DNA from: Octopus sinensis
Taxonomy: Eukaryota
NCBI RefSeq assembly: GCF_006345805.1
Contig: NW_021833453.1
Span: forward strand, 1 to 64,000
Direction of reading: 5' to 3'
Length of the DNA stretch: 64,000 nt
Shown: in pieces, positions 19,717 through 51,600 of the stretch
Layout: each line of letters begins with the position of its first letter
Position numbering within the stretch: the first letter of the stretch is position 1
Notes under the pieces: generated by a model
What the model saw: only the letters and a program-made list of their open reading frames with translations
Told to the model about the DNA's origin: nothing
The model's database searches: none
Made by a program: the position numbers and the translations under genes

Positions 19717-19859
19717 GTGAATAATTTTGTGTTGAGTCTGAATATTTTGACAAATGAATGAGTGAGTGAATGAGGGCATATCACCTCTTTGTACTACATG
19801 ACTGACTACACAAGTGACTAGCACTATCCCTACTTTGATTTTCACCACTTCATTGACTA

Positions 19860-28287: not shown

Positions 28288-29920
28288 TAAGGGTTAGGGT
28301 TAGGGATAGGGGTAGGGTTAGGGTTAGGGTTAGGGTTAGAGTTAGGGAAAGGGTTAGGGTTAGGGTTAAGTGTAGGGTTAGGGATAGGGTTACGGTTTGG
28401 ATTAGGGTTTGGATTAGGGTTACGGTAAGGTCTAGGGTCAGGGTTAGGGTAAGGGGTAGAGTTAGGGTTAGGGTTAGGGTTAAGTGTAGGATTAGGGTTA
28501 GGGTTATGGTTTGGATTAGGCTAAGGTAAGGAATTAGAGTCAGGGTTAGGGTTAGGGTAAGGGGTAGAGTTAGGGTTAGGGTTAGGGGTTAGAGTAAGGG
28601 TTAGGGTTAAGTGTAGGTTAGGGTTAGGGTTAGAGTTAGGTTAGGGTTAGGGTAAGGGTTAGGGTTAGGGTTAGGGTAAGGGATAGAGTTAGTGTTAGGG
28701 TTAGGGTTAGGGTTAAGTGTAGGGTTGGGGTTAGGGTTAGGGTTAGCATTAGGGTTAGGGTTAGGGTTATGGTTTGGATTAGGCTAAGGTAAGGGATTAG
28801 AGTCAGGGTTAGGGTAAGGGGTAGATTTAGGGTTAGGGTTAGGTTGTGGGTTAAGTGTAGGGTTAGGTTAGGGTTAGGGTAAGGGATAGAGTTAGTGTTA
28901 GGGTTAGGGTTAGAGTTAGGGTTAGGGTTAGGGTTAGGTTGTGGGTTAAGTGTAGGGTTAGGGTTAGGGATAGGGTTAAGGTTAGGGTTAGGGTTAGGGC
29001 GAGGTTCAGGGATTAGGGTTAGGGTTAGGGTAGGGTTAAGTTTAGGGTTAGCGTTAGGATTAGGATTAGGGTTAGGGTTAGGGTTAGTGTTAGGGTTAGA
29101 GTTAGGGTTAGGGTTATGGTTTGGATTAGGGTTACGGTTAGGGCTAGGGTCAGGGATTAGAGTCAGGGTTAGGGTAAGGGGTAGAGTTAGTGTTAGGGTT
29201 AGGGTTAGGGTAAGGGTTAGGGTTAAGGAAAGGGTTGGGGTTAGGGTTATGGTTTGGATTAGGGTTACGGTTAGGGCTAGGGTCAGGGATTAGATTCAGG
29301 GTTAGGGTAAGGGGTAGAGTTTGTGTTATGGTTAGGGTTAAGGTTAGGGTTAGGGTTAGGGTTAGGGTTGGGTTTTGGGTTAGGGATAGGGTTAGGGTTA
29401 GGGTTACGGTTACGGTCAGGGATTAGAGTCAGGGTAAGGGGTAGAGTTAGGGTTAGGGTTAGGGTTAGGGTTAGGGTTAGAGTTAGGTTAGGGTTAGGGT
29501 TAGGGTTAATGTTAGGGTTAGGGTTAGCTGTAGAGTTAGTGTAAGGGATAGGGTTAGGGTTAGGTGTAGAGTTAGTTTTAGGGTTAGGGTTAAGTTTAGG
29601 GCTAGGGTCAGGGGTTAGAGTCAGGGTTAGGGTTAGGGTTAGGGGTAGAATTAGGGTTAGGATTAGGTTAGGGTTTGATTAATTTTAAGGTTAGTGTTAG
29701 GGTTAGGGTTAGCGTTTGGAGTAGGTTTACGGTTAGGGCTAGTGGTTAGAGTCAGGTTAGGGTTAGTTTTAGGGTGAGGGGTTAGGGTTAGGGTTGGGGT
29801 TAGAGTTTGGCTTAGGGTTAGGGTTAGTGTTGGGGTTAGGGTTAAGGTTAGGGTTGGGGGTTAGGGTTGGAGTTAGGTTGGGGTTAGGTTTATGGTTAGC
29901 ATTAGGGTTTGAGTTAGTGT
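28288..29920 (+). repeat. Degenerate telomeric (TTAGGG)n array, interstitial in this assembly
   Basis: ~1.6 kb of TTAGGG mixed with variants (TAAGGG, TTAGAG, TTAAGTGTAGG, TTTGGATTAGG). A further 34 kb of non-telomeric sequence follows. Confidence 0.97.
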
Positions 29921-30433: not shown

Positions 30434-32560
30434 ATTCTACTAGTACTACTATTTGTACTACTACTACTAGTATTGCAAATAAGCATGAAAAAGTCAACAA
30501 AATTGCAAATGAGAAATTGTTGCTTCTTAGTGGACATTTAACACATTTGTGACATCACTTTTCTGACTCACTTAATGTTGTTTTGGAACTATGTATTAGC
30601 TGGTCGATAATAAGATTGTATGTAATAAAATATTTTATTACAATCACTAAAGTCATTCATAGAAATCTAAATGTATCAAAATAATGCAAATATGTAAGAA
30701 TGATAATAATATTAATAATTATAATGATAATAACAAAGTGTTTGTCAGAAAAATGACATCTAACAAATGTGTAACGAGTGCACTGAAAAAACAAATTTAA
30801 ATTTGCAATTTTGTTCACATTTACTTGCTTATTTGCAATACTTAGAATTTTGTTTTCTGAAAACTTTTCTGATTTCAGTGAACTCTTAAATCAATGCAAG
30901 TTTATTTTCAAACCAACCCCAACACTAACCCTAACAAAAACCCTAAAATTTACCCTAACTGTATCCCAAACCCCAAAAACCTAACCTTAAACATAACCCT
31001 AATTCCAACAGTATCGGTAACCCAACCCCTGAACACTAACCCTATCCCTAAACGTAACCCTAACCATTTTCTACTAATACTACTACTATTTGTACTACTA
31101 CTACTACTAATAATAATACTTACTATAACTACTACTACTATAACTACTACTACTACTACTAATACTACTAATACTAGTACTACTACTTCGACTACTACTA
31201 CTACTAATACTTCTACTATTTGAACTACTACTAATTCTACTAATGCTACACAAAACAAACGAAAAAACACGCCTCACGCACAAAACACCCGCGAAACAGA
31301 CGCAAAGCACACAAAACAAACAAAAAACACAGACAAAACAAATACAAAACACACAAAACACAAAAAGCACAAAAAACACAGAAAAAACACCATAAGGCAA
31401 AACTAACACACTAAAAACAAGCATTACCCAAAAAACACAAAAAGCACAAAAAACAAGCAAAACTCACATAAAACAAAAACAAAAGACTTTTCAAATGCAT
31501 AAAAAAGATGCATAAAAAAGACAAAACACAAAAAGTCTTGTGTTTACAAGACACTCTCAAAACACACTCAAAACACACTCAAAACACACAAAAACTACAC
31601 ACAAAACAAGCACTAAAGACTCTTAAAAGACACAAAACACTCTTGAAAGCACAAATAAAACACACAAAATACACACAAGAAACATAGTAAAAAAAATCAA
31701 AATACTCAAAAGTCACAAAAAACAGACACAAAAACACACAAAACAAACACAAAAACTCTTCAAAGACACTAAAAAGACACAAAAAACACTTTTTTGACTT
31801 GAGTGATCTCTTCGGTAAATATAAGTTAACTGATTGATAAAAAGCTTATATTTATCCAAGAGGTCACTGAAGTCTCGAAAGTTTTCAGGCATATGTCTTT
31901 TGGATCAGTTTTTTGTGACTTTTTTGTTTTGAGTGTCTTTTGAGTGTTTTCGGTTGTTTTCTGTGTATTTTTTGTGTGTTTTCAAAATTGCTAATTTAAA
32001 TTTGCAATATTGGATCCTTCGGGATACAATATTGCAAATTTAAATTAGCAATTTTGATAAATTTTGATAAATTTAATTTTTTTATCAATCAGCTAACTTG
32101 TATTTACCCAAAGAGATCACTCAATTCATAAAAGCTTTCAGAAAAGAAAACCTGTCAAATAAGCATAACAAATTGAACAAAATTGCTAATTCAAATTTGT
32201 TGTTTTTTAGTACTTATTTGCAATATTTTCATGTATTTTTTTAATCTGAAAACTTTTGACACTTTAGTGATCTCTTTGATAAATATAAATCCAAGAGTTC
32301 ACTCAATTCATAAAACTTTTCAGAAAATAAAATGTGTCAAAATATTGCAAATAAGTATTAAAAAAAAAAAGTGTCAAAAGTTTCCAAGATACATGTGTCA
32401 ATGTATTGCAAATGCGTATTTAAAAAACAACAAATATGAATTAGCAAATTTTGTTCATTTTTTATGCTTATTTGCAATATTTTGACACATTTTATACCCT
32501 GAAAACATTTGAGACTTCAGTGATTTCTTGAGTAATTATAAGATCAAAAGTTTTCAAGAT
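29921..32560. repeat. Scrambled low-complexity zone: (ACT)n tracts, CA/A-rich runs and diverged fragments of the 141-bp satellite in both orientations
   Basis: (ACT)n at ~30295-30475 and ~31070-31250. Satellite motifs (aatattgcaaat, gagatcact, aaaagttttcag) occur on both strands. Confidence 0.8.
30911..31066 (-). repeat. Short degenerate (CCCTAA)n block (telomeric repeat in inverted orientation)
   Basis: aacactaaccctaac...aaaccctaa...taaccctaa...aaccctatccctaaacgtaaccctaacc. Confidence 0.85.
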
Positions 32561-32569
32561 ACAGAATAT

Positions 32570-33079
32570 GTCAGTGCCTCTGACTCACCAAAGATTATGT
32601 CAAACCTCTGGAGATCGTTTATCATGTTCAGTCATCTGGTGCAGGGCTTGCCATGGGGACCTTCCAGCTTATGGCTGAATGGTCTTAGGGAGGTCATCGT
32701 GCATATAGCTGACCAGGTAAAATGATGCTTTGCATCCCTGGCAACCCTGTAACAGTGCCTCTGCATCACCCAAGATTATATCAAAACTCTGGAGATCATC
32801 GTTTATCATGTTCAATCATCTGGTGCAGCGTTTCCCATGGGGTCCCTTTCAGCCTCTAGCTGAATGGTCTTAGGGAGGTCATCGTGCATAGAGCTGACCA
32901 AGTCCAAAAATGCTTCCAATCCCTGGCAACCCTGCACCAGTGCTTCTGCATCACCCAAGATTATATAAAACCTCTGAAGATCATTCTTTATCATGTTCAG
33001 ACATCTGGTGCAAGGCTTGCCATGGGGTCCCTTCCAGCCTGTAGCTGAATGGTCTTGGGGAGTTCATCGGGCATAGAGC
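32570..33079 (-). repeat. 185-bp satellite, block 1 (~3 monomers, inverted)
   Basis: Reverse complement of the monomer of the 33089-36797 block. Confidence 0.92.
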
Positions 33080-33088
33080 AGAGTCCAA

Positions 33089-36000
33089 TATGCACGATGA
33101 CCTCCCTAAGACCATTCAGCTACAGGCTGGAAGGGAACCCTGCACCAGATGACTGAACATGATAAACGAAAATCTCCAGAAATTTGATATAATCTTGGGT
33201 GATTTAGAGGCACTGGTACAGGGTTGGCAGGGATGGGAAGCATTATTGGACTTGGTCAGCTCTATGCACGATGACCTCCCCAAGACCATTCAGCTACAGG
33301 CTGGAAGGGACCCCATGACAAGCCCTGCACCAGATGGCTGAACGTGATAAACGATGATCTCAAGAGGTTTGATATAATCTTGGGTGATACAGATGCACTA
33401 GTACAGGGTTGCCAGGGATGGGAAGAATTATTGGACTTGGTCAGCTCTACGCCCGATGACCTCCCCAAGACCATTCAGCTACAGGCTTGAAGGGACCCCA
33501 TGGCAAGCCCTGCACCAGATGTCTGAACATGATAAAGAATGATCTTCAGAGGTTTGATATAATCTTGGGTGATGCAGAGGCACTGGTGCAGGGTTGCCAG
33601 GGATGGGAAGCATTATTGGACTTGGTCAGCTCTGTGCACGATGACCTCCCTAAGACCATTCAGCTACAGGCTGGAAGGGTCCCCAAGGCAAGCCCTGCAC
33701 CAGATGGCTAAACATGATAAACGATGATCTCAAGAGGTTTGATATAATCTTGGGTGATACAGATGCACTGGTACAGGGTTGCCAGGGATGGGAAGCATTG
33801 TTGGACTTGGTCAGCTATATGCACGATGACCTCCCTAAGACCATTCAGCTACAGGCTGGAAGGGACCCCATGGCAAGCCCTGCACCAGATGTCTGAACAT
33901 GATAAAGAATGATCTTCAGAGGTTTGATATAATCTTGGGTGATGCAGAGGCATTGGTGCAGGGTTGCCAGAGATGGGAAGCGTCATTGGACTTGGTCAGC
34001 TATATGCACGATGACCTCCCTAAGACCATTCAGCTACAGGCTTGAAGGGACCCAATGGCAAGCCCTGCACCAGATGGCTGAACTTGATAAACGATGATCT
34101 CAAGAGGTTTGATATAATCTTGGGTGATGCAGGGGCACTGGTACAGGGTTGGCAGGGATGGGAAGCATTATTGGACTTGGTCAGCTCTATGCACGATGAC
34201 CTCCGCAAGACCATTCAGCTACAGGCTTGAAGGGACCCCAAGGATAGCCCTGCACCAGATGACTGAACATGATAAATGAACATCTCCAGATGTTTGATAT
34301 AATCTTTGGTGATGCAGGGGCACTGGTACAGGGTTGCCAGGGATGGGAAGAATTATTGGACTTGGTCAGCTCTATGCACGATGACCTCCCTAAGACCATT
34401 CAGCTACAGGCTGGAAGGGACCCCATGGCAAGCCCTGCACCAGATGGCTAAACATGATAAACGATGATCTCCAGAGGTTTGATATAATCTTGGGTGATGC
34501 AGAGGCACTGGTACAGGGTTGCAAGGGATGGGAAGCATTATTGGACTTGGTCAGCTATATGCACGATGACTTCCCTAACACCATTCAGCTACAGGCTTGA
34601 AGGGACCCCATGGCAAGCCCTGCACCAGATGTCTGAACATGATAAACGATGATCTTAAGAGTTTGATATAATCTTGGGTGATACAGAGGCATTGGTACAG
34701 GGTTGCCAGGGATGGGAAGAATTATTAGACTTGGTCAGCTCTATGCCCGATGACCTCCCCAAGACCATTCAGCTACAGTCTGGAAGGGACCCCATGGCAA
34801 GCCCTGCACCAGATGGCTAAACATGATAAACGATGATCTCAAGAGGTTTGATATAATCTTGGGTGATACAGAGGCATTGGTACAGGGTTGCCAGGGATGG
34901 GAAGAATTATTGGACTTGGTCAGCTCTATGCACGATGACCTCCCTAAGACCATTCAGCTACAGTCTGGAAGGGACCCCATGGCAAGCCCTGCACCAGATG
35001 GCTAAACATGATAAACGATGATCTCCAGAGGTTTGATATAATCTTGGGTGATGCAGAGGCACTGGTACAGGGTTGCAAGGGATGGGAAGCATTATTGGAC
35101 TTGGTCAGCTATATGCACGATGACTTCCCTAACACCATTCAGCTACAGGCTTGAAGGGACCCCATGGCAAGCCCTGCACCAGATGGCTGAACATGATAAA
35201 CGATGATCTTAAGAGGTTTGATATAATCTTGGGTGATACAGAGGCATTGGTACAGGGTTGCCAGGGATGGGAAGAATTATTAGACTTGGTCAGCTCTATG
35301 CCCGATGACCTCCCCAAGACCATTCAGCTACAGGCTGGAAGGGACCCCATGGACAGCCCTGCACCAGATGGCTAAACATGATAAACGATGATCTCAAGAG
35401 GTTTGATATAATCTTGGGTGATACAGAGGCATTGGTACAGGGTTGCAAGGGATGGGAAGCATTATTGGACTTGGTCAGCTATATGCACGATGACTTCCCT
35501 AACACCATTCAGCTACAGGCTTGAAGGGACCCCATGGCAAGCCCTGCACCAGATGGCTGAACATGATAAACGATGATCTCCAGAGGTTTGATATAATCTT
35601 GGGTGATGCAGAGGCACTGGTACAGGGTTGCAAGGGATGGGAAGCATTATTGGACTTGGTCAGCTCTATGCACGATGACCTCCCTAAGACCATTCAGCTA
35701 CAGGCTGGAAGGGTCCCCATGGCAAGCCCTGCACCAGATGGCTAAACATGATAAACGATGATCTCAAGAGGTTTGATATAATCTTGGGTGATGCAGAGGC
35801 ACTGATGCAGGGTTGCCAGAGATGGGAAGCATCATTGGACTTGGTCAGCTATATGCACGATGACCTCCCTAAGACCATTCAGCTACAGGCTTGAAGGGAC
35901 CCCATGGCAAGCCCTGCACCAGATGTCTGAACATGATAAAGAATGATCTCAAGAGGTTTTATATAATCTTGTGAGATGCAGAGGCACTGGTACAGGGTTG

Positions 36001-36797
36001 CCTAGGGATGGGAAGAATTATTGGACTTGGTCAGCTCTATGCCCGATGACCTCCCCAAGACCATTCAGCTACAGGCTTGAAGGGACCCCATGGCAAGCCC
36101 TGCACCAGATGTCTGAACATGATAAAGAATGATCTTCCGAGGTTTTATATAATCTTGGGTGATGCAGAGGCACTGGTACAGGGTTGCCTAGGGATGGGAA
36201 GAATTATTGGACTTGGTCAGCTCTATGCCCGATGACCTCACCAAGACCATTCAGCTACAGGCTTGAAGGGACCCCATGGCAAGCCCTGCACCAGATGTAT
36301 GAATATGATAAAGAATGATCTTCAGAGGTTGATATAATCTCTGGTGATGCAGAGGCACTGGTGCAGGGTTGCCAGAGATGGGAAGCGTCATTGGACTTGG
36401 TCATCTATATGCACGATGACCTCCCTAAGACCATTCAGCTACAGGCTGGAAGGGACCCCATGGCAAGCCCTGCACCAGATGGCTGAACTTGATAAACGAT
36501 GATCTCAAGAGGTTTGATATAATCTTGGTGATACAGAGGCATTGGTACAGGGATGCCAGGAATGGGAAGCATTATTGGACCTGGTCAGCTCTATGCACGA
36601 TGACCTCCCTAACACCATTCAGCTACAGGCTGGAAGGGACCCCAAGGATAGCCCTGCACCAGATGACTGAACATGATAAATGAACATCTCCAGATGTTTG
36701 ATATAATCTTTGGTGATGCAGGGGCACTGGTACAGGGTTGGCAGGGATGGGAAGCATTATTGGACTTGGTCATCTCTATGCACGATGACCTCCCTAA
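33089..36797 (+). repeat. 185-bp GC-richer satellite, block 2 (~20 monomers)
   Basis: Period 185 (e.g. 33159, 33344, 33529, 33714, 33899). Variants recur at 370 bp and at ~2404 bp (34241/36645). Confidence 0.98.
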
Positions 36798-38700
36798 GAC
36801 AGACACAAAAGACTCTTAAAAGACATTTAAAAAGACATAAAAAATATTTTTGTTTTCTCTGTGTTTTATAAGAACTTATAAAACACAGACAAAACAAAAA
36901 TAAGAAAACAAAAATAAGAAAAAAAATAAGAAAAAAATATGCAAAAATAACACAAAAAACACAAAACAATACCAAAATGTCACTAAAGTGTTAAAAGTTT
37001 TCAGGTTAGAAAATGTCAAAATATTGCAAATATGTACTAAATTAAAACAAATTTCAATTGGCAATTTTGATCACTGTGTTATGCTTATTTGCAATACTTT
37101 GACACATTCTGAAAACTTCTGAGATATGAATAAAACGTGTCTAAATATTGCAAATAATTTCTAAACAATCAGAAAATTGAATTAGCAATTTTGGTCACTT
37201 TTTTATGCTTCTTTGCAATATTTTGATACATTTTGTTTTCTGAAACTTTTGTGAATTGTATGATCTCTCGTTAACTGGTTGATTATAAGATTATATTTAT
37301 CCAAGAGATCACTGAATTCTCGAACGTTCTCAGGCTACAAAATGTGAACAAAATTGCAAATTGAAATTTGTTGTCTTTTAGTACATATTTGCAATAATTT
37401 GACACATTTTGTATCCTAAAAAATTTTGACATTTTTTTATCTATTTCATAAATATAATCAGCTAACTTGTATTTACACTAGAGATCACACAAGTTTGTTG
37501 TTTTTTCGCACTTATTCACAATATTTTGACATATTTTGTATCCTGGAAACTTTTCACAATTTGGTGATCTCTTTGATAAATATAATCTTATTATTTACCG
37601 AAGAGATCACAGTTTTTGTGCTTAGTTTGTGTGAGTTTTGTTTTATTTTGTTTCACATGTCTTTTGTGTCAGTTTTTTGTGACTTTTGTGTTTTAAGTGT
37701 CTTTTGAGTGTTTTTATTTGTTTTCTGTGTATTTTGTGTGTGTTTTCAAAATTGCTAATTTAAATTTGCAATATTGTATCCTGAAAACTTTTGATAAATT
37801 TAATTTTTTTATACACAAGAGATCACTGAATTCATAAAAGCTTTCAGAAAAATAAAACCTGTCAAATAAGCATAACAAATTGAACAAAATTGCTATTTCA
37901 AATTTGTTGTTTTTTAGTACTTATTTGCAATATTTTAACGTATTTTTTTAATCTGAAAACTTTTGACAATTTAGTGATCTCTTTGATAAATCTAATCTTA
38001 TCAATCAGCTGTTACATTTATCCATGAGTTCACTCAATTCATAAAAACTTTTCAGAAAATAAAATGTGCCAAAATATTGGAAATAAGCAAAAAAATCTGA
38101 ACAAAATTGCAAATTTAAATTAAACTTTTGATACTTCTGTGATCTCTGATAAATATAATCAGTTTTACCAAATAGAGAAAACAAAATGTGTCAAAATATT
38201 GCAAATAAGCATAAAAAAGTGAACCACGTTGCTAATTCAAATTTGTACTTCTTTAGTATATGCAATATTTTAAAACATTTTGTATCCTGAAATCTTTTGA
38301 TACTTTAATGATCTCTTTGATAGATATAATCTCTAAGAAACAAATTTGAATTAGCAACTTTGTTCACTGCTTAGTGTTTGGGTAATAAAATTATATTTAT
38401 CACAGAGATCACTAAGGTTTTCAGAATAGAAAATGTGTCGAGATATTGCATAAAAAAAACAAATTTAAATTAGCAAACTTTTGTGATTTCAGTGATCTCT
38501 TGGGAAAATCTTTAATAAGATTATAATAAGATTACATTTATATAAGTATTCACTAAACTTTTCAGAATACAAAATGGGTCAAATATTGCAAATGGGTATT
38601 AAAAAAACAACAAATTTGAATTAGCAAATTTTGTTCATTTTTTATGCTTATTTGCAATATTTTGACACGTTTTGTATCCTGAAAAGTTTTCAAGATACAC
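36798..38700. repeat. AT-rich spacer of diverged 141-bp-satellite fragments in mixed orientation
   Basis: For example aaaagttttcaggttagaaaatgtcaaaatattgcaaat at ~36990-37030, with inverse motifs (ttttgacacattttgtatcctgaaa) further on. Confidence 0.8.
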
Positions 38701-38704
38701 AATG

Positions 38705-39686
38705 TATCAGTGCCTCTGATTCACCCAAGATTATATCAAACTTCTGGAGATCATTGTTTATCATGTTTAGTCATCTGGTGCAGAGCTTGCCGTGGCGTCC
38801 CTTCGAGCTTATAGCTGAATGGTCTTAGGGATGTCATCGTGAACAGAGCATACCAGGTCAAATAATGGTGCCCATCCCTGGCAAACCTGCACCAGTGCCT
38901 CTGCATAACCGAAGATTATATCAAACCTCTGTAGATCATTGTTTATCATGTTCAGACATCCGGTGCAGGGCTTGCCATGGAGCCCCTTCCAGCCTGTAGG
39001 TGAATGGTTTAGGGAGGTCATCGTGAACAAAGATGACCAGGTCCAATGATGCTCCCAATCCCTGGCAAAACTGCACCAGTAGCTCTGCATCACCCAAGAT
39101 TATATCAAACCTCTGAAGATCATTCTTCATCATGTTCAGACATCTGGTGCAGGGCTTGTCATTGGGTCCCTTCCAGCCTGTAGCTGAATAGTCTTAGGGA
39201 GGTCATCGTGCACAGAGCTGACCAGGTCCAATGATGCTTCCCAACTCTGAATAAAACCAGACCAGTACCTCTGCATCATCCAAGATTATATTAAACATCT
39301 GGAGATCATCGTTTATCATGTTCAGTAATCAGGTGCAGGGCTTGCCATGGGATCCTTTCAGCCTGTAGCTGAATGGTCTTAGGGAGGTCATCGTGCACAG
39401 AGCTGACCAGGTCCAATGATGCTTCCCATCCCTGGCAACACTGCACCAGTGCCTCTGCATCATCCAAGATTATATCAAACCTCTGAAGATCATTGTTTAC
39501 CATGTCCAGACATCTGGTGTAGGGCATGCCATGGGGTCCCTTCCAGCCTGTAGGTGAATGGTCTTAGGGAGGTCATCGGGCACAGATTTGACCAAGTCCA
39601 ATAATGCGTCCCATCCCTGGCAACACTGTAACAGTGCCTGTAAGTCACCTGAGATTATATCAAACCTCTGGAGATCATAGTTTATC
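38705..39686 (-). repeat. 185-bp satellite, block 3 (~5 more diverged monomers, inverted)
   Basis: Same monomer on the minus strand, with an abrupt junction to the 141-bp array at ~39687. Confidence 0.93.
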
Positions 39687-42600
39687 AAGTTTTCAGGTTA
39701 GAAAATGTCAAAATATTGCATGTGTACTTGAAAAAACAACAAAAAATTTAGTGATCTCTTAGCTAAATATGAATTAACTGATTGATAAACAGCTTATATT
39801 TATCCAAGAGATCACTAAAATCTCAAAAGTTTTCAGGTCAGAAAATGTCAAAATATTGCATATGTGTACTTGAAAAACAAAAAAAAATTTAGTGATCTCT
39901 TAGCTAAATATAAGTAAACTGAATGATAAAAAGCTTATATTTACCCAAGAGATCACTAAAATCGCTAAAGTTTTCAGGTTAGAAAATGTCAAAATATTGC
40001 ATATGTGTACTTAAAAAACAAAAAAAATTTAGTGATCTCTTCGCTAAATATAAGTTAACTGATGATAAAAAGCTTATATTTATCCAACAGATCACTAAAA
40101 TCTCAAAAGTTTTCAGGTTAGAAAATGTCAAAATATTGCATATGTGTACTTGAAAAACAACAAAAAATTTAGTGATCTCTTAGCTAAATATAAGTTAAAT
40201 GATTGATAAAAAGCTTTTATTTATCCAAGAGATCACTAAATTCGCAAAAGTTTTCAGGTTAGAAAATGTCAAAATATTGCATATGTGTACTTGAAAAACA
40301 ACAAAAAATTTAGTGATCTCTTAGCTAAATATATGTTAACTGATTGATAAAAAGCTTATATTTATCCAAGAGATCACTAAAATCTCAAAAGTTTTCAGGT
40401 TAGAAAATGTCAAAATATTGCATATGTGTACTTGAAAAACAACAAAAAATTTTGTGATCTCTTAGCTAAATATAAGTTAACTGATTGATAAAAAGCTTAT
40501 ATTTATCCAAGAGATCACTAAAATCGCAAAAGTTTTCAGGTTAGAAAATGTCAAAATATTGCATATGTGTACTTGAAAAACAACAAAAAATTTAGTGATC
40601 TCTTAGCTAAATATAAGTTAACTGATTGATAAAAAGCTTATATTTATCCAAGAGATCACTAAAATCGCAAAAGTTTTCAGGTTAGAAAATGTCAAAATAT
40701 TGCATATGTGTACTTGAAAAACAACAAAAAATTTAAAGCTAAATATAAGGTAACTGATTGATAAAAAGCTTATATTCATCCAAGAGATCACTAAAATCTC
40801 AAAAGTTTTCAAGTTAGAAAATGTCAAAATATTACATATGTGAACTTGAAAACAACAAAAAATTTAATGATCTCTTAGCTAAATATAAGTAAACTGAATG
40901 ATGAAAAGCTTATATTTACCCAAGAGATCACTAACGCAAAAGTTTTCAGGTTAGAAAATGTCAAAATATTGCATAAGTGTACTTGAAAAACAACAAAAAA
41001 TTTAGAGATCTAATAGCTAAATATAAGGTAACTGATTGATAAAAAGCTTATATTTATCCAAGAGATCACTAAAATCTCAAAAGTTTTCAGGTTAGAAGAT
41101 ATCAAAATATTGCATATGTGTACTTGAAAAACAACAAAAAATTTAGTGATCTCTTCGCTAAATATAAGTTAACTGATTGATAAAAACCTTATATGTATCC
41201 AATATATCACTAAAGTCTCAAACGTTTTCAGGTTGGAAAATGCCAAAATATTGCATATGTGTTCTTGAAAAACAACAAAAAATTTAATGATCTCTTAGCT
41301 AAATATAAGTTAGCTGATTGATAAAAAGCTTAACCAAGAGATCACTAAAATCGCAAAAGTTTTCAGGTTAGAAAATGTCAAAATATTGCATATGTGTACT
41401 TGAAAAACAACAAAAAATTTAGAGCTAAATATAAGTTAACTGATTGATAAAAAGCTTAGATTCATCCAAGAGATCACTAAAATCTCAAAAGTTTTCAGGT
41501 TAGAAAATGTCAAAATATTGCATATGTGAACTTGAAAAACAACAAAAAATTTAGTGATCTCTTAGCTAAATATAAGTTAACTGAATGATAAAAAGCTTAT
41601 ATTTACCCAAGAGATCACTAACGCAAAAGTTTTCTGGTTACAAAATGTCAAAATATTGCATATGTGTACTTGAAAAACAACAAAAATTTAGTGATCTAAT
41701 AGCTAAATATAAGGTAACTGTTGATAAAAAGCTGATATTTATCCAACAGATCACTAAAATCTCAAAAGTTTTCAGGTTAGAAAATGTCAAAATATTGCAT
41801 ATGTGTACTTGAAAAACAACAAAAATTTAGAGCTAAATATAAGTTAACTGATTGATAAAAAGCTTATATTTATCTAAGAGATCACTAAAATCTCAAAAGT
41901 TTTCAGTTAGAAAATGTCAAAATATTGCATATGTGTACTTGAAAAACAACAAAAAATTTAGTGATCTAATAGCTAAATATAAGCTAACTGATTGATAAAA
42001 AGCTTATATTTATCCAAGAGATCACTAAAATCTCAAAAGTTTTCAGGTTAGAAGATATCAAAATATTGCATATGTGTACTTGAAAAACAACAAAAAATTT
42101 AGTGATCTCATAGCTAAATATAAGTTAACTGATTGATAAAAACCTTATATGTATCCAATATATCACTAAAGTCTCAAACGTTTTCAGGTTAGAAAATGCC
42201 AAAATATTGCATATGTGTTCTTGAAAAACAACAAAAAATTTAATGATCTCTTAGCTAAATATAAGTTAGCTGATTGATAAAAAGCTTAACCAGAGATCAC
42301 TAAAATCGCAAAAGTTTTCACGTTACAAAATGTCAAAATTTGCATATGTGTACTTAAAAAACAACAAAAATTTAGAGCTAAATATAAGTTAACTGATTGA
42401 TAAAAAGCTTATATTCATCCAAGAGATCACTAAAATCTCAAAAGTTTTCAGGTTAGAAAATGTCAAAATATTGCATATGTGAACTTGAAAAACAACAAAA
42501 AATTTAGTGATCTCTTAGCTAAATATAAGTTAACTGAATGAAAAAAAGCTTATATTTACCCAAGAGATCACTAACGCAAAAGTTTTCTGGTTACAAAATG

Positions 42601-45600
42601 TCAAAATATTGCATATGTGTACTTGAAAAACAACAAAAAATTTAGTGATCTAATAGCTAAATATAAGGTAACTGGTTGATAAAAAGCTGATATTTATCCA
42701 ACAGATCACTAAAATCTCAAAAGTTTTCAGGTTACAAAATGTCAAAATATTGCATATGTGTACTTGAAAAACAACAAAAAATTTAGAGCTAAATATAAGT
42801 TAACTGATTGATAAAAAGCTTATATTTATCCAAGAGATCACTAAAATCTCAAAAGTTTTCAGGTTAGAAAATGTCAAAATATTGCATATGTGTACTTGAA
42901 AAACAACAAAAAATTTAGTGATCTAATAGCTAAATATAAGCTAACTGATTGATAAAAAGCTTATATTTATCCAAGAGATCACTAAAATCTCAAAAGTTTT
43001 CAGGTTAGAAGATATCAAAATATTGCATATGTGTACTTGAAAAACAACAAAAAATTTAGTGATCTCATAGCTAAATATAAGTTAACTGATTGATAAAAAC
43101 CTTATATGTATCCAATATATCACTAAAGTCTCAAACGTTTTCAGGTTGGAAAATGCCAAAATATTGCATATGTGTACTTGAAAAACAACAAAAAATTTAA
43201 TGATCTCTTAGCTAAATATAAGTTAGCTGATTGATAAAAAGCTTAACCAAGAGATCACTAAAATCGCAAAAGTTTTCAGGTTAGAAAATGTCAAAATATT
43301 GCATATGTGTACTTGAAAAACAACAAAAAATTTAGAGCTAAATATAAGTTAACTGATTGATAAAAAGCTTATATTCATCCAAGAGATCACTAAAATCTCA
43401 AAAGTTTTCAGGTTGGAAAATGTCAAAATATTGCATATGTGAACTTGAAAAACAACAAAAAATTTAGTGATCTCTTAGCTAAATATAAGTTAACTGAATG
43501 ATAAAAAGCTTATATTTACCCAAGAGATCACTAACGCAAAAGTTTTCAGGTTAGAAAATGTCAAAATATTGCATATGTGTACTTGAAAAACAACAAAAAA
43601 TTTAGTGATCTCTTAGCTAAATATAAGTTAGCTGATTGATAAAAAGCTTAACCAAGAGATCACTAAAATCGCAAAAGTTTTCAGGTTAGAAAATGTCAAA
43701 ATATTGCATATGTGTACTTGAAAAACAACAAAAAATTTAGTGATCTCTTAGCTAAATATAAGTTAACTGATTGATAAAAGCTCATATTTATCCAAGAGAT
43801 CACTAAAATCGCGAAAGTTTCAGGTTAGAAAATGTCAAAATATTGCATATGTGTACTTGAAAAACAACAAAAGATTTAGTGATCTCTTGGCTAAATATAA
43901 GTTAGCTGATTGATAAAAAGCTTATATTTATCCAAGAGATCACTAAAATCTCAAAAGTTTTCAGGTTAAAAAATGTCAAAATATTGCATATGTGAACTTG
44001 AAAAACAACAAAAAATTTAGTGATCTCTTGGCTAAATATAAGTTAGCTGATTGATAAAAAGCTTATATTTATCCAAGAGATCACTAAAATCTCAAAAGTT
44101 TTCAGGTTAGAAAATGTCAAAATATTGCATATGTGTACTTGAAAAACAACAAAAAATTTAGAGCTAAATATAAGTTAACTGATTGAAAAAAAGCTTATAT
44201 TCATCCAAGAGATCACTAAAATCTCAAAAGTTTTCAGGTTAGAAAATGTCAAAATATTGCATATGTGAACTTGAAAAACAACAAAAAATTTAGTGATCTC
44301 TTAGCTAAATATAAGTAAACTGAATGATAAAAAGCTTATATTTACCCAAGAGATCACTAACGCAAAAGTTTTCAGGTTACAAAATGTCAAAATATTGCAT
44401 ATGTGTACTTGAAAAACAACAAAACATTTAGTGATCTAATAGCTAAATATAAGGTAACTGATTGATAAAAAGCTGATATTTATCAAGAGATCACGAAAAT
44501 CTCAAAAGTTTTCAGGTTAGAAAATGTCAAAATATTGCATATGTGTACTTGAAAAACAACAAAAAATTTAGAGCTAATATAAGTTAACTGATTGATAAAA
44601 AGCTTACATTTATCCAAGAGATCACTAAAATCTCAAAAGTTTTCAGGTTAGAAAATGTCAAAATATTGCATATGTGTACTTGAAAGACAACAAAAAATTT
44701 AGTGATCTAATAGCTAAATATAAGGTAACTGATTGATAAAAAGCTTATATTATCCAAGAGATCACTAAAATCTCAAATGTTTTCGGTTAGAAGATATCAA
44801 AATATTGCATATGTGTACTTGAAAAACAACAAAAAATTTAGTGATCTCTTAGCTAAATATAAGTTAACTGATTGATAAAAGCTCATATTTATCCAAGAGA
44901 TCACTAAAATCGCGAAAGTTTTCAGGTTAGAAAATGTCAAAATATTGCATATGTGTACTTGAAAAACAACAAAAGATTTAGTGATCTCTTGGCTAAATAT
45001 AAGTTAACTGATTGATAAAAAGCTTATATTTATCCAAGAGATCACTAAAATCACAAAAGTTTTCAGGTTAGAAAATGTCAAAATATTGCATATGTGTACT
45101 TGAAAAACAACAAAAAATTTAGTGATCTCTTGGCTAAATATAAGTTAACTGATTGATAAAAAGCTTATATTTATCCAAGAGATCACTAAAATCGCAAAAG
45201 TTTTCAGGTTAGAAAATGTCAAAATATTGCATATGTGTACTTGAAAAACAACAAAAAATTAGAGCTAAATATAAGTTACTGATTGATAAAAAGCTTATAT
45301 TCATCCAAGAGATCACTAAAATCTCAAAAGTTTTCAGGTTAGAAAATGTCAAAATATTGCATATGTGAACTTGAAAAACAACAAAAAATTTAGTGATCTC
45401 TTAGCTAAATATAAGTAAACTGAATGATAAAAAGCTTATATTTACCCAAGAGATCACTAACGCAAAAGTTTTCAGGTTACAAAATGTCAAAATATTGCAT
45501 ATGTGTACTTGAAAAACAACAAAACATTTAGTGATCTAATAGCTAAATATAAGGTAACTGATTGATAAAAAGCTGATATTTATCCAAGAGATCACGAAAA

Positions 45601-48600
45601 TCTCAAAAGTTTTCAGGTTAGAAAATGTCAAAATATTGCATATGTGTACTTGAAAAACAACAAAAAATTTAGAGCTAAATATAAGTTAACTGATTGATAA
45701 AAAGCTTACATTTATCCAAGAGATCACTAAAACTCAAAAGTTTTCAGGTTAGAAAATGTCAAAATATTGCATATGTGTACTTGAAAGACAACAAAAAATT
45801 AGTGATCTCATAGCTAAATATAAGGTAACTGATTGATGAAAAGCTTATATTTATCCAAGAGATCACTAAAATCTCAAATGTTTTCGGTTAGAAGATATCA
45901 AAATATTGCATATGTGTACTTGAAAAACAACAAAAAATTTAGAGCTAAATATAGTTAACTGATTGATAAAAAGCTTATATTTATCCAAGAGATCACTAAA
46001 ATATTAAAAGTTTTAAGGTTAGAAAATGTCAAAATATTGCATATGTGTACTTGAAAAACAACAAAAAATTTAGTGATCTAATAGCTAAATATAAGTTAAC
46101 TGATTGATAAAAAGCTTATATGTATCCAATATATCACTAAAGTCTCAAACGTTTTCAGGTTGGAAAATGCCAAAATATTGCATATGTGTACTTGAAAAAC
46201 AACAAAAAATTTAGTGATCTCTTAGCTAAATATAAGTTAGCTGATTGATAAAAACTTATATTTATCCTAGAGATCACTAAAATCTCAAAAGTTTTCAGGT
46301 TAGAAAATGTCAAAATATTGCATATGAGTACATGAAAAACAACAGAAAATTTAGTGATCTCTTAGCTAAATATAAGTTAGCTGATGATAAAAAGCTTAAC
46401 CAGAGATCACTAAAATCGCAAAAGTTTTCAGGTTAGAAAATGTCAAAATATTGCATATGTGTACTTGAAAAACAACAAAAAATTTAGTGATCTCTTAGCT
46501 AATATAAGTTAACTGATGATAAAAGCTCATATTTATCCAAGAGATCACTAAAATCTTAAAAGCTTTCAGGTTAGAAAATGTCAAAATATTGCATATGTGT
46601 ACTTGAAAAACAACAAAAAATTTAGAGCTAAATATAAGTTAACTGATTGATAAAAAGCTTATTTATCCAAGAGATCACTAACGCAAAAGTTTTCAGGTTA
46701 CAAAATGTCAAAATATTGCATATGTGTACTTGAAAAACAACAAAAAATTTAGTGATCTAAAAGCTAAATATAAGGTTACTGGTTGATAAAAAGCTGATAT
46801 TTATCCAAGAGATCACTAAAATCTCAAAAGTTTTCAGGTTAGAAAATGTTAACTGTCAAATATAGCATATATGTACTTGAAAAACAACAAAAAATTTAGA
46901 GCTAAACATAAGTGAACTGATTGATAAAAACTTATATTTATCCTAGAGATCACTAAAATCTCAAAAGTTTTCAGGTTAGAAAATGTCAAAATATTGCATA
47001 TGTGTACTTCAAAAACAACAAAAACTTTAGTGATCTAATAGCTAAATATAAGGTAACTGATTGTTAAAAAGCTTATATTTATCCAAGAGATCACTAAAAT
47101 CGAAAAAGTTTTCAGGTTAGAAAATGTCAAAATATTGCAAATGTGTACTTGAAAAACAACAAAAAATTTAGTGATCTAATAGCTAAATAAGTTAACTGAT
47201 TGATAATGAGCTTAATATATCCAATATATCACTAAAGTCTCAACGTTTTCAGGTTGGAAAATGCCAAAATATTGCATATGTGTACATGAAAAACAACAAA
47301 AAAATTTAGTGATCTCTTAGCTAAATATCAGTTAGCTGATTGATAAAAAGCTTAACCAGAGATCACTAAAATCGCAAAAGTTTTCAGGTTAGAAAATGTC
47401 AAAATATTGCATATGTGTACTTGAAAAACAACAAAAAATTTAGTGATCTCTTTGCTAAATATAAGTTAGCTGATTGATAAAAAGCTTATATTTATCCTAG
47501 AGATCACTAAAATCTCAAAAGTTTTAAGGTTAGAAAATGTCAAATTATTGCATATGGTGTACTTGAAAAACAACAAAAAATTTAGACCTAAATATAAGTT
47601 AAATGATTGATAAAAAGCTTATATTTATCCAATATATCACTAAAATCTCAAAAGTTTTCAGGTTAGAAAATGTCAAAATATTGCATATGTGTACTTGAAA
47701 GACAACAAAAAATTTAGAGATAAATATAAGTTAACTGATTGATAAGAAGCTTATATTTATCCAAGAGATCACTAAAATCTCAAAAGTTTTCAGGTTAGAA
47801 AATGTTAAAATATTGCATATGTGTACTTGAAAAACAACAAAAAATTTAGAGCTAAATATAATTTAACTGATTGATAATAAGCTTATATTTATCCAAGAGA
47901 ACACTAAAATCTCAAAAGTTTTCAGGTTAGAAAATGTCAAAATATTGCAAATGTGTACTTGAAAAACAACAAAAAATTTAGTGATCTAATAGCTAAATAT
48001 AAAGTAACTGATTGATAAAAAGCTTATATTTATCCAAGAGATCACTAAAATCGAAAAAGTTTTCAGGTTAGAAAATGTCAAAATATATAGTGATCTCTTA
48101 GCTAAATAAAAGTTAACTGATTGATAAAAACTTATATTTATCGAAGTGATCTCTTAGCTAAATAAAAGTTAACTGATTGATAAAAACTTATATTTATCGA
48201 AGAGATCACTAAAATCTTAAAAGTTGTCAGGTTAGAAGATATCAAAATATTGCATATGTGTACTTGAAAAACAACAAAAAATTTAGTGATCAAATAGCTA
48301 AATATAAGTTAACTGATTGATAAAAAGCTTAAATGTATCCAATATATCATTGAAGTCTCAAACGTTTTCAGGTTGGAAAATGCCAAAATATTGCATATGT
48401 GTACTTGAAAAACATCAAAAAATTTAGTTATCTCTTAGCTAAATATAAGTTAGCTGATTGATAAAAAGCTTAACCAAGAGATCACTAAAATCGCAAAAGT
48501 TTTCAGGTTAGAAAATGTCAAAATATTGCATATGTGTACTTGAAAAACAACAAAAAATTTAGAGCTAAATATAAGTTAACTGATTGATAAAAAGCTGATA

Positions 48601-51600
48601 TTTATCCAAGAGATCACTAAAATCCAAAAAAGTTTTCAGGTTAGAAATTTTCAAAATATTGCATATGTGTACTTGAAAAACAACAAAAAATTTAGTGATC
48701 ACATAGCTAAATATAAGTTAACTGTTTGATAAAAACTTATATTATCCTAGAGATCACTAAAATCTCAAAAGTTTTCAGGTAGAAAATGTCAAAATATTGC
48801 ATATGTGTCCTTGAAAGACAACAAAAAATTTAGAGCTAAATAAAGTTAATTGATTGATAAAAAGCTTATATTTATCCAAGAGATCACTAAAATCTCAAAA
48901 GCTTTCAGGTTAGAAAATGTCAAAAAATTGCATATGTGTACTTGAAAAAAAACAAAAAATTTAGAGCTAAATAAAAGTTAACTGATTGATAAAAAGCGTA
49001 TATTTATCCAAGAGATCACTAAAATCTCAAAAGTTTTCAGGTTAGAAAATGTCAAAATATTGCAAATGTATACATGAAAAACAACAAAAAATTTAGTGAT
49101 CTAATAGCTAAATATAAGGTAACTGATTGATAAAAAGCTTATATTTATCCAAGAGATCACTAAAATCTCAAAAGTTTTCAGGTTAGAAAATGTAAAAATA
49201 TTGCATATGTGAACTTGAAAAACAACAAAAAATTTAGTGATCTCTTAGCTAAATATAAGTAAACTGAATGATGAAAAGCTTATATTTACCCAAGAGATCA
49301 GTAACGCAAAATTTTTCAGGTGACAAAATGTCAAAATATTGCATATGTGTATTTGAAAAACAACAAAAAATTTAGAGCTAAATATAAGTTAACTGATTGA
49401 TAAAAAGCTTATATTTATCCAAGAGATCACCAAAATCTCAAAAGTTTTCAGGTTAAAAAATATCAAAATATTGCATATGTGTACTTGAAAAACAACAAAG
49501 AATTTAGTGATCTCTTAGCTAAATATAAGTGAACTGATTGATAAAAACTTATATTTATCCTAGAGATCACTGAAATCTCAATAGTTTTCAGTTAGAAAAT
49601 ATCAAAATTATTGCATATGTTTACTTGAAAACAACAAAAATTTAGTGATCTCTTAGCTAAATATAAGTAGCTGATTGATAAAAAGCTTATATTATCCCAG
49701 AGATCACTAACGCAAAAGTTTTCAGGTTACAAAATGTCAAAATATTGCATATGTGTACTTGAAATAAGACAAAAATTTAGTGATCTAATAGCTAAATATA
49801 AGTTAACTGATTGATAAAAAGCTGCTATTTATCCAAGAATCACTAAAATCTCAAAAGTTTTCAGGTTAGAAAATGTCAAAATATTGCATATGTGTACTTG
49901 AAAACAACAAGAGATCACTAACTCAAAAGTTTCCAGGTTAAGAATGTCAAAATGTGCAAATATGTACTTGAAAAACAACAAAAATTTAGTGATCTAATAA
50001 CTAAATGTAAGTTAACTGATTGATAAAAAGCTTATATTTCTCCAAGAGATCACTAAAATCGCAAAAGTTTTCAGGTTAGAAAATGTCAAAATTTTTGCAT
50101 ATGTGTACTTGAAAAACAACAAAATGTATAGCTAAATATAAGTTAACTGATTGATAAAAGCTTATATTTATCCAAGTGATCACTAAAATCTCAAAAGTTT
50201 TCAGGTTAGAAAATGTAAAAATATTGGATATGTTACTTGAAAAACACAAAAATTTAGTGATCTCTTAGCTAAATATAAGTAAACTGATGATAAAAAGCTT
50301 ATATTTACCCAAGAGATCAGTAACGCAAAAGTTTTCAGGTTGACAAAATGTCAAAATATTGCATATGTGTATTGAAAAACAACCAAAAATTTAGCTAAAT
50401 ATAAGTTAACTGATTGATACAAAGCTTATATTTATCCAAGAGATCACTAAAATCTCAAAAGTTTTCAGGTTAAAAAATATCAAAATATTGCATATGTGTA
50501 CTTGAAAAAAAAAAAAAAAATTTAGTGATCTCTTAGCTAAATATAAGTGAACTGATTGATAAAACTATATTTATCCAAGTGATCACTAAAATCAATAGTT
50601 TCTCAGGTTAAAAAATATCAAAATATTGCATATGTGTACTTGAAATAAAACAAAAATTTAGTGATCTAATAGCTAAATAAAGGAACTGATTGATAAAAAG
50701 CGCATTTATCAAGAGATCACTAAAATCTCAAAAGTTTTCAGGTTAAAATACAAAAACATATTGCATATGTGTACTTGAAAAACAACAAAAATTTACAGCT
50801 AAATTAAATTAACTGATTGATAAAAAGCTGATATTCATCCAAGAGATCACTAAAATCTCAAAGTTTTCAGGTTAAAAATATCAAAGTTGCATAGGTGTAC
50901 TTGAAAACAACAAAAATTTAGTGATCTCATAGCTAAATATAAGTGAACTGATTGATAAAAACTTATATTTATCCTAGAGATCACTAAATCTCAAAAGTTT
51001 TCAGGTTAGAAAATGTCAAATATTGCATATGTTTACTTGAAAAACACAAAAATTTAGTGATCTCTTAGCTAAATACAATTCATCTGATTGATAAAAAGCT
51101 TTACCAAGAAATCACTAAAATCTCAAAAGTTTTAGGTAGAAAATGTCAAAATATTGCATATGTGTACTTGAAAACAACAAAAAATTTAGTGATCTCTCAG
51201 CTAATACAAGTTAGCTGATGATAAAAAGCTTATATTTAATCCAAGAGATCACTGAACGCAAAGTTTTCAGGTTACAAAATGTCAAAATATGCATATCTGT
51301 ACTTGAAATAAAACAAAAAATTTAGTGATCTAATAGCTAAATATAAGGTAACTGATTGATAAAACGATATATTTATCCAGAGATCACTAAATCTCAAAAG
51401 TTTTCAGGTTAGAAAATGACAAAATATTGCATATGTACTTGAAAAACAACAAAAAATTTACAGCTAATATAAGTAACTGTTTGATAAAAAGCTGATATTT
51501 ATCCAGAGATCACACAAAATCGCAAATGTTTTCAGGTTAAAAAAAATCAAAATATTGCATATGGTTACTTGAAAAACAACAAAAATTTAGTGATCTCATA

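What the first reader, a model, noticed from the sequence alone, without database searches (positions are those of the whole stretch)
32570..39686. 185-bp satellite appears to be the amplified C-terminus of an RTE-like LINE ORF
With one frameshift the monomer reads MPDDLPKTIQLQ / GWKGPHGKPCTRWLNMINDDLKRFDIILGDAEALVQGCQGWEALLDLVSSMH. This follows the RTE-type ORF2 C-terminal pattern (M.ED..K...G.R.RGRP..RW.D.I..DL...A..L.QDR..W..LV). The in-window RTE has MDEDSCVKK...GTCERGRPRKTWDVVVKHDLRTLG...D...W. Expected Arg codons appear as CAT and TGC, the products of CpG deamination of CGT and CGC. The unit closes where ...TCT ATG CAC overlaps ATG CCC/CAC GAT GAC, a microhomology that could have seeded the repeat. 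The source family differs from the local RTE. A LINE-coding-derived satellite between an ex-telomere and a large satellite array is likely undescribed for this lineage. The homology is by eye.
Basis: partly seen in the sequence, partly recalled or inferred. Interest (0 to 1): 0.85.

Follow-up and report, generated by a model that had tools for sequence, protein, structure and literature searches.

The report
LINE-derived 185-bp satellite DNA
A 185-bp tandem repeat, in what is probably a cephalopod genome, is a decayed and amplified copy of the last ~60 codons of a LINE retrotransposon's ORF2; it is real, but it belongs to an already known kind of transposon-derived satellite.

Summary
The 185-bp satellite is real. 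It has about 28 monomers in three blocks: 32572-33090 (-), 33091-36800 (+, 20 copies, about 92% alike) and 38703-39691 (-). There are no copies elsewhere in the window.

Its open frame (DHSATGWKGPHGKPCTRWLNMINDDL..DAEALVQGCQGWEALLDLVSSMHDDLP) matches the extreme C-termini of LINE ORF2 fragments. A profile search of 1.84 billion proteins gave E = 3e-9 to 1e-3. Nucleotide identity to the best copies is about 70% over 154-170 bp. In one teleost copy the matched segment lies directly downstream of an endonuclease and a reverse transcriptase. That endonuclease's homologues are named "craniofacial development protein 2-like", which points to an RTE-type element.

Supported: the LINE origin, the CpG-decayed Arg codons (CAT and TGC against CGT/CGA and CGC in relatives), and a parent family distinct from the local LINE.

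Not supported:
- No frameshift is needed.
- "MHDD" is the parent's own C-terminal tail, not the upstream "RM.ED" motif.
- ATGCAC is contiguous parental sequence, not the repeat junction. The junction lies about 15-20 bp further on.

The monomers show no coding constraint. LINE-ORF2-derived satellites are already known in hamster, seal and chicken, so this is a new member of a known kind.

The parts
32572..33090 (-). Left inverted block of the 185-bp satellite (about 2.8 monomers). It is truncated at consensus position ~131 at its left edge.
   Evidence: Monomers are 88-93% identical to the consensus.
33086..33096 (.). Head-to-head inversion junction between the - block and the + block (..GTCCAAT|ATGCACGATGAC..).
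   Evidence: Read directly from the sequence against the monomer alignment.
33091..36800 (+). Main array: 20 monomers of 184-186 bp (one carries an 11-bp deletion). Mean pairwise identity is 92%. It ends at consensus position 17.
34380..35488 (+). Recent 3-monomer (555 bp) duplication inside the main array. 34380-34933 matches 34934-35488 at 97-99% per monomer.
   Evidence: identity matrix, offset 3.
36801..38702 (.). Spacer that is not 185-bp satellite: A-rich low complexity, then degenerate 141-bp-satellite-like units in both orientations.
38703..39691 (-). Right inverted block of the 185-bp satellite (about 5.3 monomers, the most diverged). It abuts the 141-bp array directly.
   Evidence: Monomers are 82-92% identical to the consensus.
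31890..32571 (.). Flank of the left block. Together with that block it is paralogous to 37654-39690. This is an old segmental duplication of [flank + (-) array], 78-88% identical, with the same truncated terminal monomer.
39687..64000 (+). Neighbouring 141-bp AT-rich satellite (context only, not LINE-derived).
28290..29917 (+). Degenerate interstitial (TTAGGG)n on the other side (context only).

Best explanation
The 185-bp unit is one contiguous piece of a LINE: roughly the last 61 codons of ORF2. It runs from a few codons before the conserved G-W-(K/R)-R-P-R-G-(R/K)-P-R-T-R-W motif to a few codons before the stop codon. The parent is an APE-type, probably RTE-clade, element.

Shown:
- The piece was joined head-to-tail and amplified into an array.
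- It is now non-coding heterochromatic DNA. CpG sites have decayed, stops and frame slippage are present, and there is no codon-position constraint.
- The array was remodelled by an inversion and by an older segmental duplication. This gave the present (-)(+)(-) arrangement between an interstitial telomere-repeat tract and a large AT-rich satellite.

Inferred:
- The start was a short 5'-truncated or fragmentary LINE copy that underwent an initial tandem duplication. This could have been replication slippage or unequal exchange, or circularisation followed by rolling-circle copying.
- The array then grew by unequal exchange of one to several monomers.

No cellular function is required by anything seen.
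For: Database-scale similarity:
- A profile of 12 window peptides searched against 1.84e9 proteins gives 10 eukaryotic hits at E 3e-9 to 1e-3. The two remaining hits are bacterial cadherin-repeat proteins; P0001 has 9 short stretches summed and scans as Cadherin_4, P0007 was judged from its search row only. Both are treated as spurious.
- Hit P0005 carries RVT_1 (E 2e-9) directly upstream of the matched segment.
- Hit P0006 is the last ORF of a teleost element ordered EN - RT - C-terminus.

Pairwise and nucleotide similarity:
- BLASTP to the best relative (L010) gives 44% identity over 57 aa with no gaps, E 3e-19.
- BLASTN gives 71% over 154 bp, E 7e-17. Local alignments span 154-170 bp.

Codon-level evidence:
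- An ungapped codon table shows satellite CAT and TGC at positions where relatives keep CGT/CGA and CGC.
- The consensus has 1 CpG in 185 bp at 51% GC. Array CpG observed/expected is 0.18.

Evidence that it no longer codes:
- Substitutions by codon position are 126/96/120, p = 0.09.
- 185 is not a multiple of 3.

Parent clade:
- Endonuclease homologues of the teleost relative are named 'craniofacial development protein 2-like'.
- Bovine CFDP2 contains the RTE-1 endonuclease domain (Iwashita 2003, cited in PMC4613681).

Array dynamics.
Against: - No dispersed copy of the parent family is present in the 64-kb window. Whether it exists in this genome is unknown.
- The closest relatives are only about 70% identical in nucleotides and come from unnamed sequencing runs and from teleosts.
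- RTE-clade membership rests on database names and element size, not on a phylogeny.
- The head-to-tail junction is placed only to about +/-5 bp (consensus positions ~13-23), so the seeding mechanism cannot be read from it.
- Only 10 true hits passed E 1e-3 in a very large database.
Confidence: 0.85

Rival explanations
1. The immediate source was not the LINE itself. It was a SINE or other non-autonomous element whose 3' module was copied from the LINE's 3' end, and the resemblance to ORF2 is therefore second-hand.
For: From established knowledge: RTE-mobilised SINEs carry the partner LINE's 3' end, and because RTE 3' UTRs are short this often includes coding sequence. No dispersed parent LINE is seen in the window.
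Against: The monomer covers about 185 bp of coding sequence but apparently stops before the stop codon and 3' UTR. That 3' end is the very part a SINE must keep. No tRNA- or 5S-like head adjoins the arrays, and Rfam gave no hit.
Confidence: 0.1
2. The resemblance to LINE ORF2 termini is chance. The open frame is an accident of a GC-balanced repeat.
For: The top-scoring hit in the profile search is a spurious bacterial repeat protein. Pfam has no model for this segment.
Against: There are ten independent eukaryotic hits with whole-database E-values down to 3e-9. The alignment is ungapped for 55-60 aa. Nucleotide identity is 70% over more than 150 bp. The matches sit at the same place, the ORF2 terminus after RT. 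The Arg-to-His/Cys changes fall exactly at CpG codons.
Confidence: 0.02
3. The satellite derives from the LINE family that is present in the window (copies at 4446-4814, 7414-9858 and 14291-15496).
For: Both C-termini share the generic G..RGRP..(T/R)W....DL pattern. P0005 and P0006 match window 7438-7644 at E ~4e-6.
Against: The direct comparison gives only 31% identity over 29 aa, E 0.055, against 43-49% over 55-60 aa for the other family. No nucleotide similarity was found. The local family carries a PHD-like finger and 62-bp 3' repeats that the relatives lack.
Confidence: 0.02
4. The repeat is still functional as coding sequence, either as a repetitive protein or as a domesticated LINE C-terminal domain.
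For: Open frames of 68-84 aa recur along the array.
Against: The period is 185 bp, so the frame slips by one base per monomer. The consensus carries TAA and TGA in the relevant frames. There is no third-position excess of substitutions. Conserved Arg residues have decayed to His, Cys and Gly.
Confidence: 0.01

Closest known systems
PROsat of Phodopus roborovskii and Pvc20 of the harbour seal (satellites derived from LINE-1 ORF2; listed in PMC9659126)
   Same: The satellite monomer is derived from the ORF2 coding sequence of an autonomous LINE. It was amplified in tandem and no longer codes.
   Different: Those parents are mammalian L1. Here the parent is an APE-type, apparently RTE-clade element in an invertebrate (probably a cephalopod). 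The piece is the extreme C-terminal ~61 codons, and only about 70% nucleotide identity to any relative could be recovered.
Chicken HinfI repeat / CR1 (partial ORF2 plus 3' UTR of CR1 embedded in a tandem repeat; PMC9659126)
   Same: The 3' end of a LINE, including the end of ORF2, forms part of a tandem repeat unit.
   Different: In the chicken repeat the CR1 piece, with its 3' UTR, is embedded in a larger unit. Here the whole 185-bp unit is accounted for by coding sequence, and the stop codon and 3' UTR appear to be excluded.
Common cetacean satellite (L1 3' end) and Drosophila 18HT (HeT-A/TART) (PMC9659126)
   Same: LINE 3' regions seed satellites located in heterochromatin or next to telomere-related sequence.
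   Different: Those derive mainly from non-coding 3' regions. 18HT is centromeric on the Y chromosome, and its parents are telomere-specialised elements.
RTE clade of non-LTR retrotransposons (e.g. BovB/RTE-1, the source of the bovine CFDP2 endonuclease domain)
   Same: The relatives of the monomer belong to a compact EN-RT element. Its endonuclease homologues are auto-named CFDP2-like in fish, shrimp and amphioxus. The C-terminal G.R.RGRP..RW...DL....A.DR..W pattern is present.
   Different: Clade membership was not tested by phylogeny. The satellite itself is only a 185-bp fragment.

Membership tests
Satellite DNA | Head-to-tail tandem monomers of constant length in arrays of many copies | tested here: met
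   Period 185 bp, about 28 monomers, 20 of them in one uninterrupted array.
Satellite DNA | Genome-wide abundance and long arrays at heterochromatic sites | not testable with these tools
   Only one 64-kb window is available. Locally the satellite lies between an interstitial telomere tract and a satellite array of more than 24 kb.
LINE-ORF2-derived satellite | Statistically significant similarity of the monomer to LINE ORF2 protein and DNA | tested here: met
   hmmsearch E 3e-9 to 1e-3 against 1.84e9 proteins. BLASTP E 3e-19 pairwise. BLASTN 71% over 154 bp.
LINE-ORF2-derived satellite | The matched segment belongs to an element with endonuclease and reverse transcriptase | tested here: met
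   P0005 has RVT_1 upstream of the match. L006 reads EN ORF 5804-6610, RT pieces 6749-7942, then C-terminus 8001-8336.
LINE-ORF2-derived satellite | Parent element present as dispersed copies in the same genome | not testable with these tools
   None is present in the window outside the arrays. No eukaryotic genome collection can be searched here.
RTE clade (parent element) | N-terminal APE-type endonuclease most similar to RTE endonucleases | tested here: inconclusive
   Homologues are named 'craniofacial development protein 2-like' and some carry PF03372. The name reflects the best curated match, not a phylogeny.
RTE clade (parent element) | Single ORF of ~1000 aa, element of ~3.2 kb, no ORF1 | tested here: inconclusive
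   In L006, EN through the C-terminus spans about 2.9 kb. The copy is broken by stops, and an unrelated ORF lies upstream.
RTE clade (parent element) | RT domain groups with RTE reference elements in a phylogeny | not tested
   No labelled reference LINE sequences could be fetched.
Local in-window LINE family as parent | The monomer is more similar to the local LINE C-terminus than to other families | tested here: not met
   E 0.055 with 31% identity over 29 aa, against 43-49% over 55-60 aa for the other family.

The most novel reading that the evidence does not exclude
The (-)(+)(-) arrangement of LINE-coding-derived repeats may act as a natural hairpin locus. Read-through transcripts would form double-stranded RNA and feed siRNA or piRNA production against the 3' end of the parental RTE-type ORF2. 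The satellite would then be a domesticated 'trap' rather than inert heterochromatin. A related possibility is that it is the only surviving trace of a horizontally acquired RTE family whose nearest relatives are now seen in fishes, amphioxus and shrimp.
Probability: 0.07. Interest if true: 0.6.

Novelty: new member of a known kind. Interest (0 to 1): 0.3.

Why it matters
The array adds a clean invertebrate example, probably cephalopod, to the short list of satellites derived from LINE coding sequence. The whole monomer maps to one contiguous stretch of ORF2, and the CpG-decay signature is readable codon by codon.

It can serve three practical purposes:
- As a marker for repeat annotation. Such arrays are easily mis-called as LINE fragments or as spurious genes.
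- As a marker for dating the parent family's activity.
- As a way into studying the subtelomere-like or fusion-like region it sits in.

It does not open a new mechanism or answer a long-standing question.

Tried and rejected
Searches that found nothing:
- Pfam scan of the satellite peptide: no family, because no model covers this LINE C-terminal segment.
- Rfam scan of the whole window: no hits.
- Full-text paper search for six sequence strings of the two satellites and for the run accession SRR11869384: no paper.
- Literature searches for cephalopod or octopus satellites derived from LINEs: nothing relevant.
- Metagenome scan for a degenerate monomer pattern: no match.
- Search for higher-order repeat structure: none beyond a local 3-monomer duplication.
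- Search for DNA secondary structure in the 185-mer: none, z = -0.47.

Organism identification:
- The GH38 ORF was uninformative. The tool's length filter hides full-length proteins, and the best hit is 48% to an oyster fragment.
- The local LINE ORF gave 82-84% identity to Octopus proteins instead.

Other attempts:
- Pinning down the head-to-tail junction from relatives resolved it only to consensus positions ~13-23. The 5' extension (DHSAT against D(A/P)..A(A/T)) and the 3' extension (DDLPKT against DD(I/V)(S/P)GT) overlap on the same bases.
- Direct derivation from the in-window LINE is rejected.
- The top hmmsearch hit P0001 and hit P0007 are set aside as spurious, being summed short matches to long repeat proteins. 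P0001 scans as a bacterial cadherin-like repeat protein. P0007 was not fetched or scanned; it is judged from its row (3959 aa, 3 stretches).
Full report
**1. Observation**

Tandem Repeats Finder reports three period-185 arrays at 32572-33079, 33138-36800 and 38708-39691. I cut the monomers on a conserved anchor and aligned them.

- The main array (33091-36800, + strand) holds 20 monomers of 184-186 bp. One carries an 11-bp deletion. They are 89-98% identical to the consensus, and their mean pairwise identity is 92%.
- The left block (32572-33090) has about 2.8 monomers in the opposite orientation.
- The right block (38703-39691) has about 5.3 monomers, also in the opposite orientation. The two flanking blocks are more diverged, at 81-88% pairwise.
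- BLASTN of the consensus finds 29 hits in the window. All lie inside 32572-39691.
- The 1.9 kb between the main array and the right block (36801-38702) is not this satellite. It is A-rich low complexity followed by degenerate 141-bp-satellite-like units.

**2. The reading frame**

The consensus (185 bp, 51% GC, a single CpG) has one frame that reads DHSATGWKGPHGKPCTRWLNMINDDLQRFDIILGDAEALVQGCQGWEALLDLVSSMHDDLPKTIQLQA. Open stretches of 68-84 aa in this frame recur along the array. Because 185 = 3 x 62 - 1, the frame slips by one base at each monomer.

**3. Is it LINE-derived?**

I built a profile from 12 window peptides (A1) and searched it against 1.84 billion representative proteins. Twelve proteins passed E 1e-3.

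- Two are long repeat proteins whose scores are sums of short partial matches. P0001, with 9 stretches, scans as Cadherin_4. P0007 (3959 aa, 3 stretches) was not fetched or scanned. I treat both as spurious.
- The other ten (E 3e-9 to 1e-3) are short eukaryotic predictions that align without gaps over about 50-60 residues. An example is ..GWRRPRGKPRTRWLDVLAGDLQQQGVAIEDAEQLAQDHQCWKQLVHLVGS...
- Three come from teleost genome annotations (Tachysurus ichikawai, Pampus argenteus). The rest come from Logan assemblies of sequencing runs.
- P0005 carries an RVT_1 match (E 2e-9) directly upstream of the aligned segment.
- P0006 is the last ORF of a Tachysurus element ordered as follows: endonuclease ORF at 5804-6610, RT pieces at 6749-7942, C-terminal ORF at 8001-8336.

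Fetching the encoding contigs allowed nucleotide comparison.

- The consensus is 71% identical to L001 over 154 bp (E 7e-17 in that small database).
- Local alignments to five further copies span 154-170 bp.
- The best protein relative is L010, which reads ..GHVLRLLPEHPTRALLKFNAAVAGWWKCRGRPCTRWMDMVEEDLQKLILTQEDVEGLAQDRQQWKALVDMVSSMHNDDVPV*. It gives 44% identity over 57 ungapped residues, pairwise E 3e-19.

The refutation criterion named in the finding was "no significant similarity to any non-LTR C-terminus". That criterion is not met, so the core interpretation stands.

**4. Which part of the parent, and where is the junction?**

The relatives show that ..LVD(L/M)VSS(M/V)H(D/N)D.. is contiguous at the very end of ORF2, followed within 3-18 codons by the stop.

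- The satellite's ..DLVSSMHDDLP.. is therefore the parent's own tail. At nucleotide level, L004 aligns straight across TCTATGCAC|GATGACCTCCCT.
- Upstream, the alignment runs ungapped to the codons before G-W: GCT ACA GGC TGG in the satellite against GCT GCA GGC TGG in L007.
- The two ends meet somewhere in consensus positions ~13-23 (AAGACCATTCA). There the 5' and 3' extensions overlap, and the distant relatives available cannot separate them.
- The whole monomer thus equals one contiguous parental stretch of about 61 codons. In L004, G-W to the stop is 62 codons, or 186 bp.
This is not the homologous segment. In alignment A2 the local LINE's RMDEDSCVKK pairs with the parent's RLLPEHPTRALL, which lies outside the monomer.
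- The proposed ATGCAC microhomology is therefore not at the junction.
- The main array's right edge stops at consensus position 17 (36800), inside the inferred junction zone. This may or may not be meaningful.

**5. CpG decay and loss of coding**

In the ungapped codon table:

- The satellite's CAT (His) faces CGT in L010 and CGA in L005, L006 and L007.
- The first TGC (Cys) faces CGC in L007.
- The second TGC faces CGC in L010 and CGT in L006.
- Other decayed copies show TGT, CAC or CAT at the same sites.

CpG observed/expected is 0.18 in the array and 0.32 in the unique part of the window. Substitutions among monomers fall 126/96/120 on codon positions 1/2/3 (p = 0.09), so there is no coding constraint. 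The 185-mer has no unusual DNA fold (z = -0.47).

**6. Parent clade**

- The endonuclease ORF of the Tachysurus relative has homologues named "craniofacial development protein 2-like" in Tachysurus, Penaeus japonicus (53% identity) and Branchiostoma lanceolatum (62%). Some carry PF03372.
[quoted passage not shown] 2003, cited in PMC4613681).
- From EN to the C-terminus the element spans about 2.9 kb. From general knowledge, this fits the compact single-ORF RTE design.

This makes "RTE-like" the best label, but I could not run a phylogeny with labelled references.

The family is distinct from the LINE present in the window.

- The direct comparison gives 31% over 29 aa, E 0.055.
- The RT pieces are only 30-40% identical.
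- The local element has a PHD-like finger and 62-bp tandem repeats at its 3' end.

**7. Array history**

- A 555-bp (3-monomer) segment, 34380-34933, is repeated at 34934-35488 with 97-99% identity. This shows growth by multi-monomer unequal exchange.
- The left flank plus the left block (31890-33079) is paralogous to 37654-39690 at 78-88%. Both share the same truncated terminal monomer, and the two terminal monomers are each other's best match at 88%. This is an older segmental duplication of [flank + (-) array].
- The homogeneous (+) array meets the left block head-to-head at about 33086-33096.
- How the first duplication arose is inference. Candidates are slippage or unequal exchange after a short truncated insertion, or rolling-circle copying of a circularised fragment.

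**8. Host**

The local LINE ORF (14291-15496) is 82-84% identical to predicted proteins of Octopus bimaculoides and O. vulgaris. The next named hits, cnidarian, amphioxus and bivalve, are 46-56% identical. The window is therefore probably from a cephalopod, likely an octopod. This rests on a transposon, so it is not proof. I found no paper describing this satellite or any LINE-derived satellite in cephalopods.

**9. Comparison and verdict**

Satellites derived from LINE sequence, including ORF2, are already catalogued: PROsat (Phodopus, L1 ORF2), Pvc20 (seal, L1 ORF2), the chicken HinfI repeat (CR1 partial ORF2 plus 3' UTR), the common cetacean satellite and Drosophila 18HT (PMC9659126). The present case is a new member of that kind. 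It is notable mainly for its clean one-piece mapping to the ORF2 terminus, its apparently RTE-type parent, and its probable cephalopod host.

Interest is modest at 0.3. The hairpin or small-RNA idea raised by the inverted blocks is not excluded, but nothing here supports it.

Noticed in passing
window 28290-29917 and 30915-31065: A degenerate (TTAGGG)n tract of ~271 units on the + strand (GC skew +0.73) is followed about 1 kb later by a short degenerate (CCCTAA)n tract. This head-to-head arrangement looks like a telomere-telomere fusion scar. (ACT)n/(CTA)n and (ACACAAAAC)n low-complexity runs lie between and beside the two tracts.
   Followed up: no
window 39687-64000: The 141-bp AT-rich satellite (26% GC) also shows 273- and 411-bp periodicities. 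Each monomer contains an imperfect dyad with arms of ~27 bp (TTTAGTGATCTCTTAGCTAAATAT..ATATTTATCCAAGAGATCACTAAA). The DNA fold z-score is -3.85, with 0 of 200 shuffles as stable. It could be MITE-like or a hairpin-forming centromere-type repeat.
   Followed up: partly
window 6880-7034, 12424-12533, 13871-14018: A GC-rich 62-bp unit is tandemly repeated about 2.5 times. Two of the three sites lie immediately 3' of the in-window LINE copies at 7414-9858 and 14291-15496 (- strand). The local LINE's 3' region therefore itself carries a short tandem repeat.
   Followed up: partly
window 14291-15496 (-), also 7999-8556 (-): The local LINE ORF has a PHD/C1-like zinc finger (CSICRKG..CTKCKLWTHK.C) between the RT and the C-terminal motif. 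It hits Pfam PHD at E 2.6e-4, below the gathering score. Relatives are widespread in marine invertebrates and amphioxus, and are 82-84% identical in Octopus.
   Followed up: partly
window 18691-19761 (+): An uninterrupted 356-aa ORF carries a GH38 C-terminal domain (alpha-mannosidase II-like, E 2e-29). It is only 45-48% identical to the best listed fragments. It could be an unusually long exon or a retrocopy.
   Followed up: partly
window 1-28000: CpG observed/expected is only 0.32 at 40% GC in the non-satellite part of the window. I would not have expected so low a value in a cephalopod, but this rests on my impression and was not checked.
   Followed up: no
L006 5804-6610 and its homologues: The endonuclease of the satellite's parental-type family is 53-62% identical between a catfish, a penaeid shrimp and amphioxus. 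That similarity looks high to me for such distant hosts and may hint at horizontal spread of this RTE-type family; I ran no comparison to test this.
   Followed up: no
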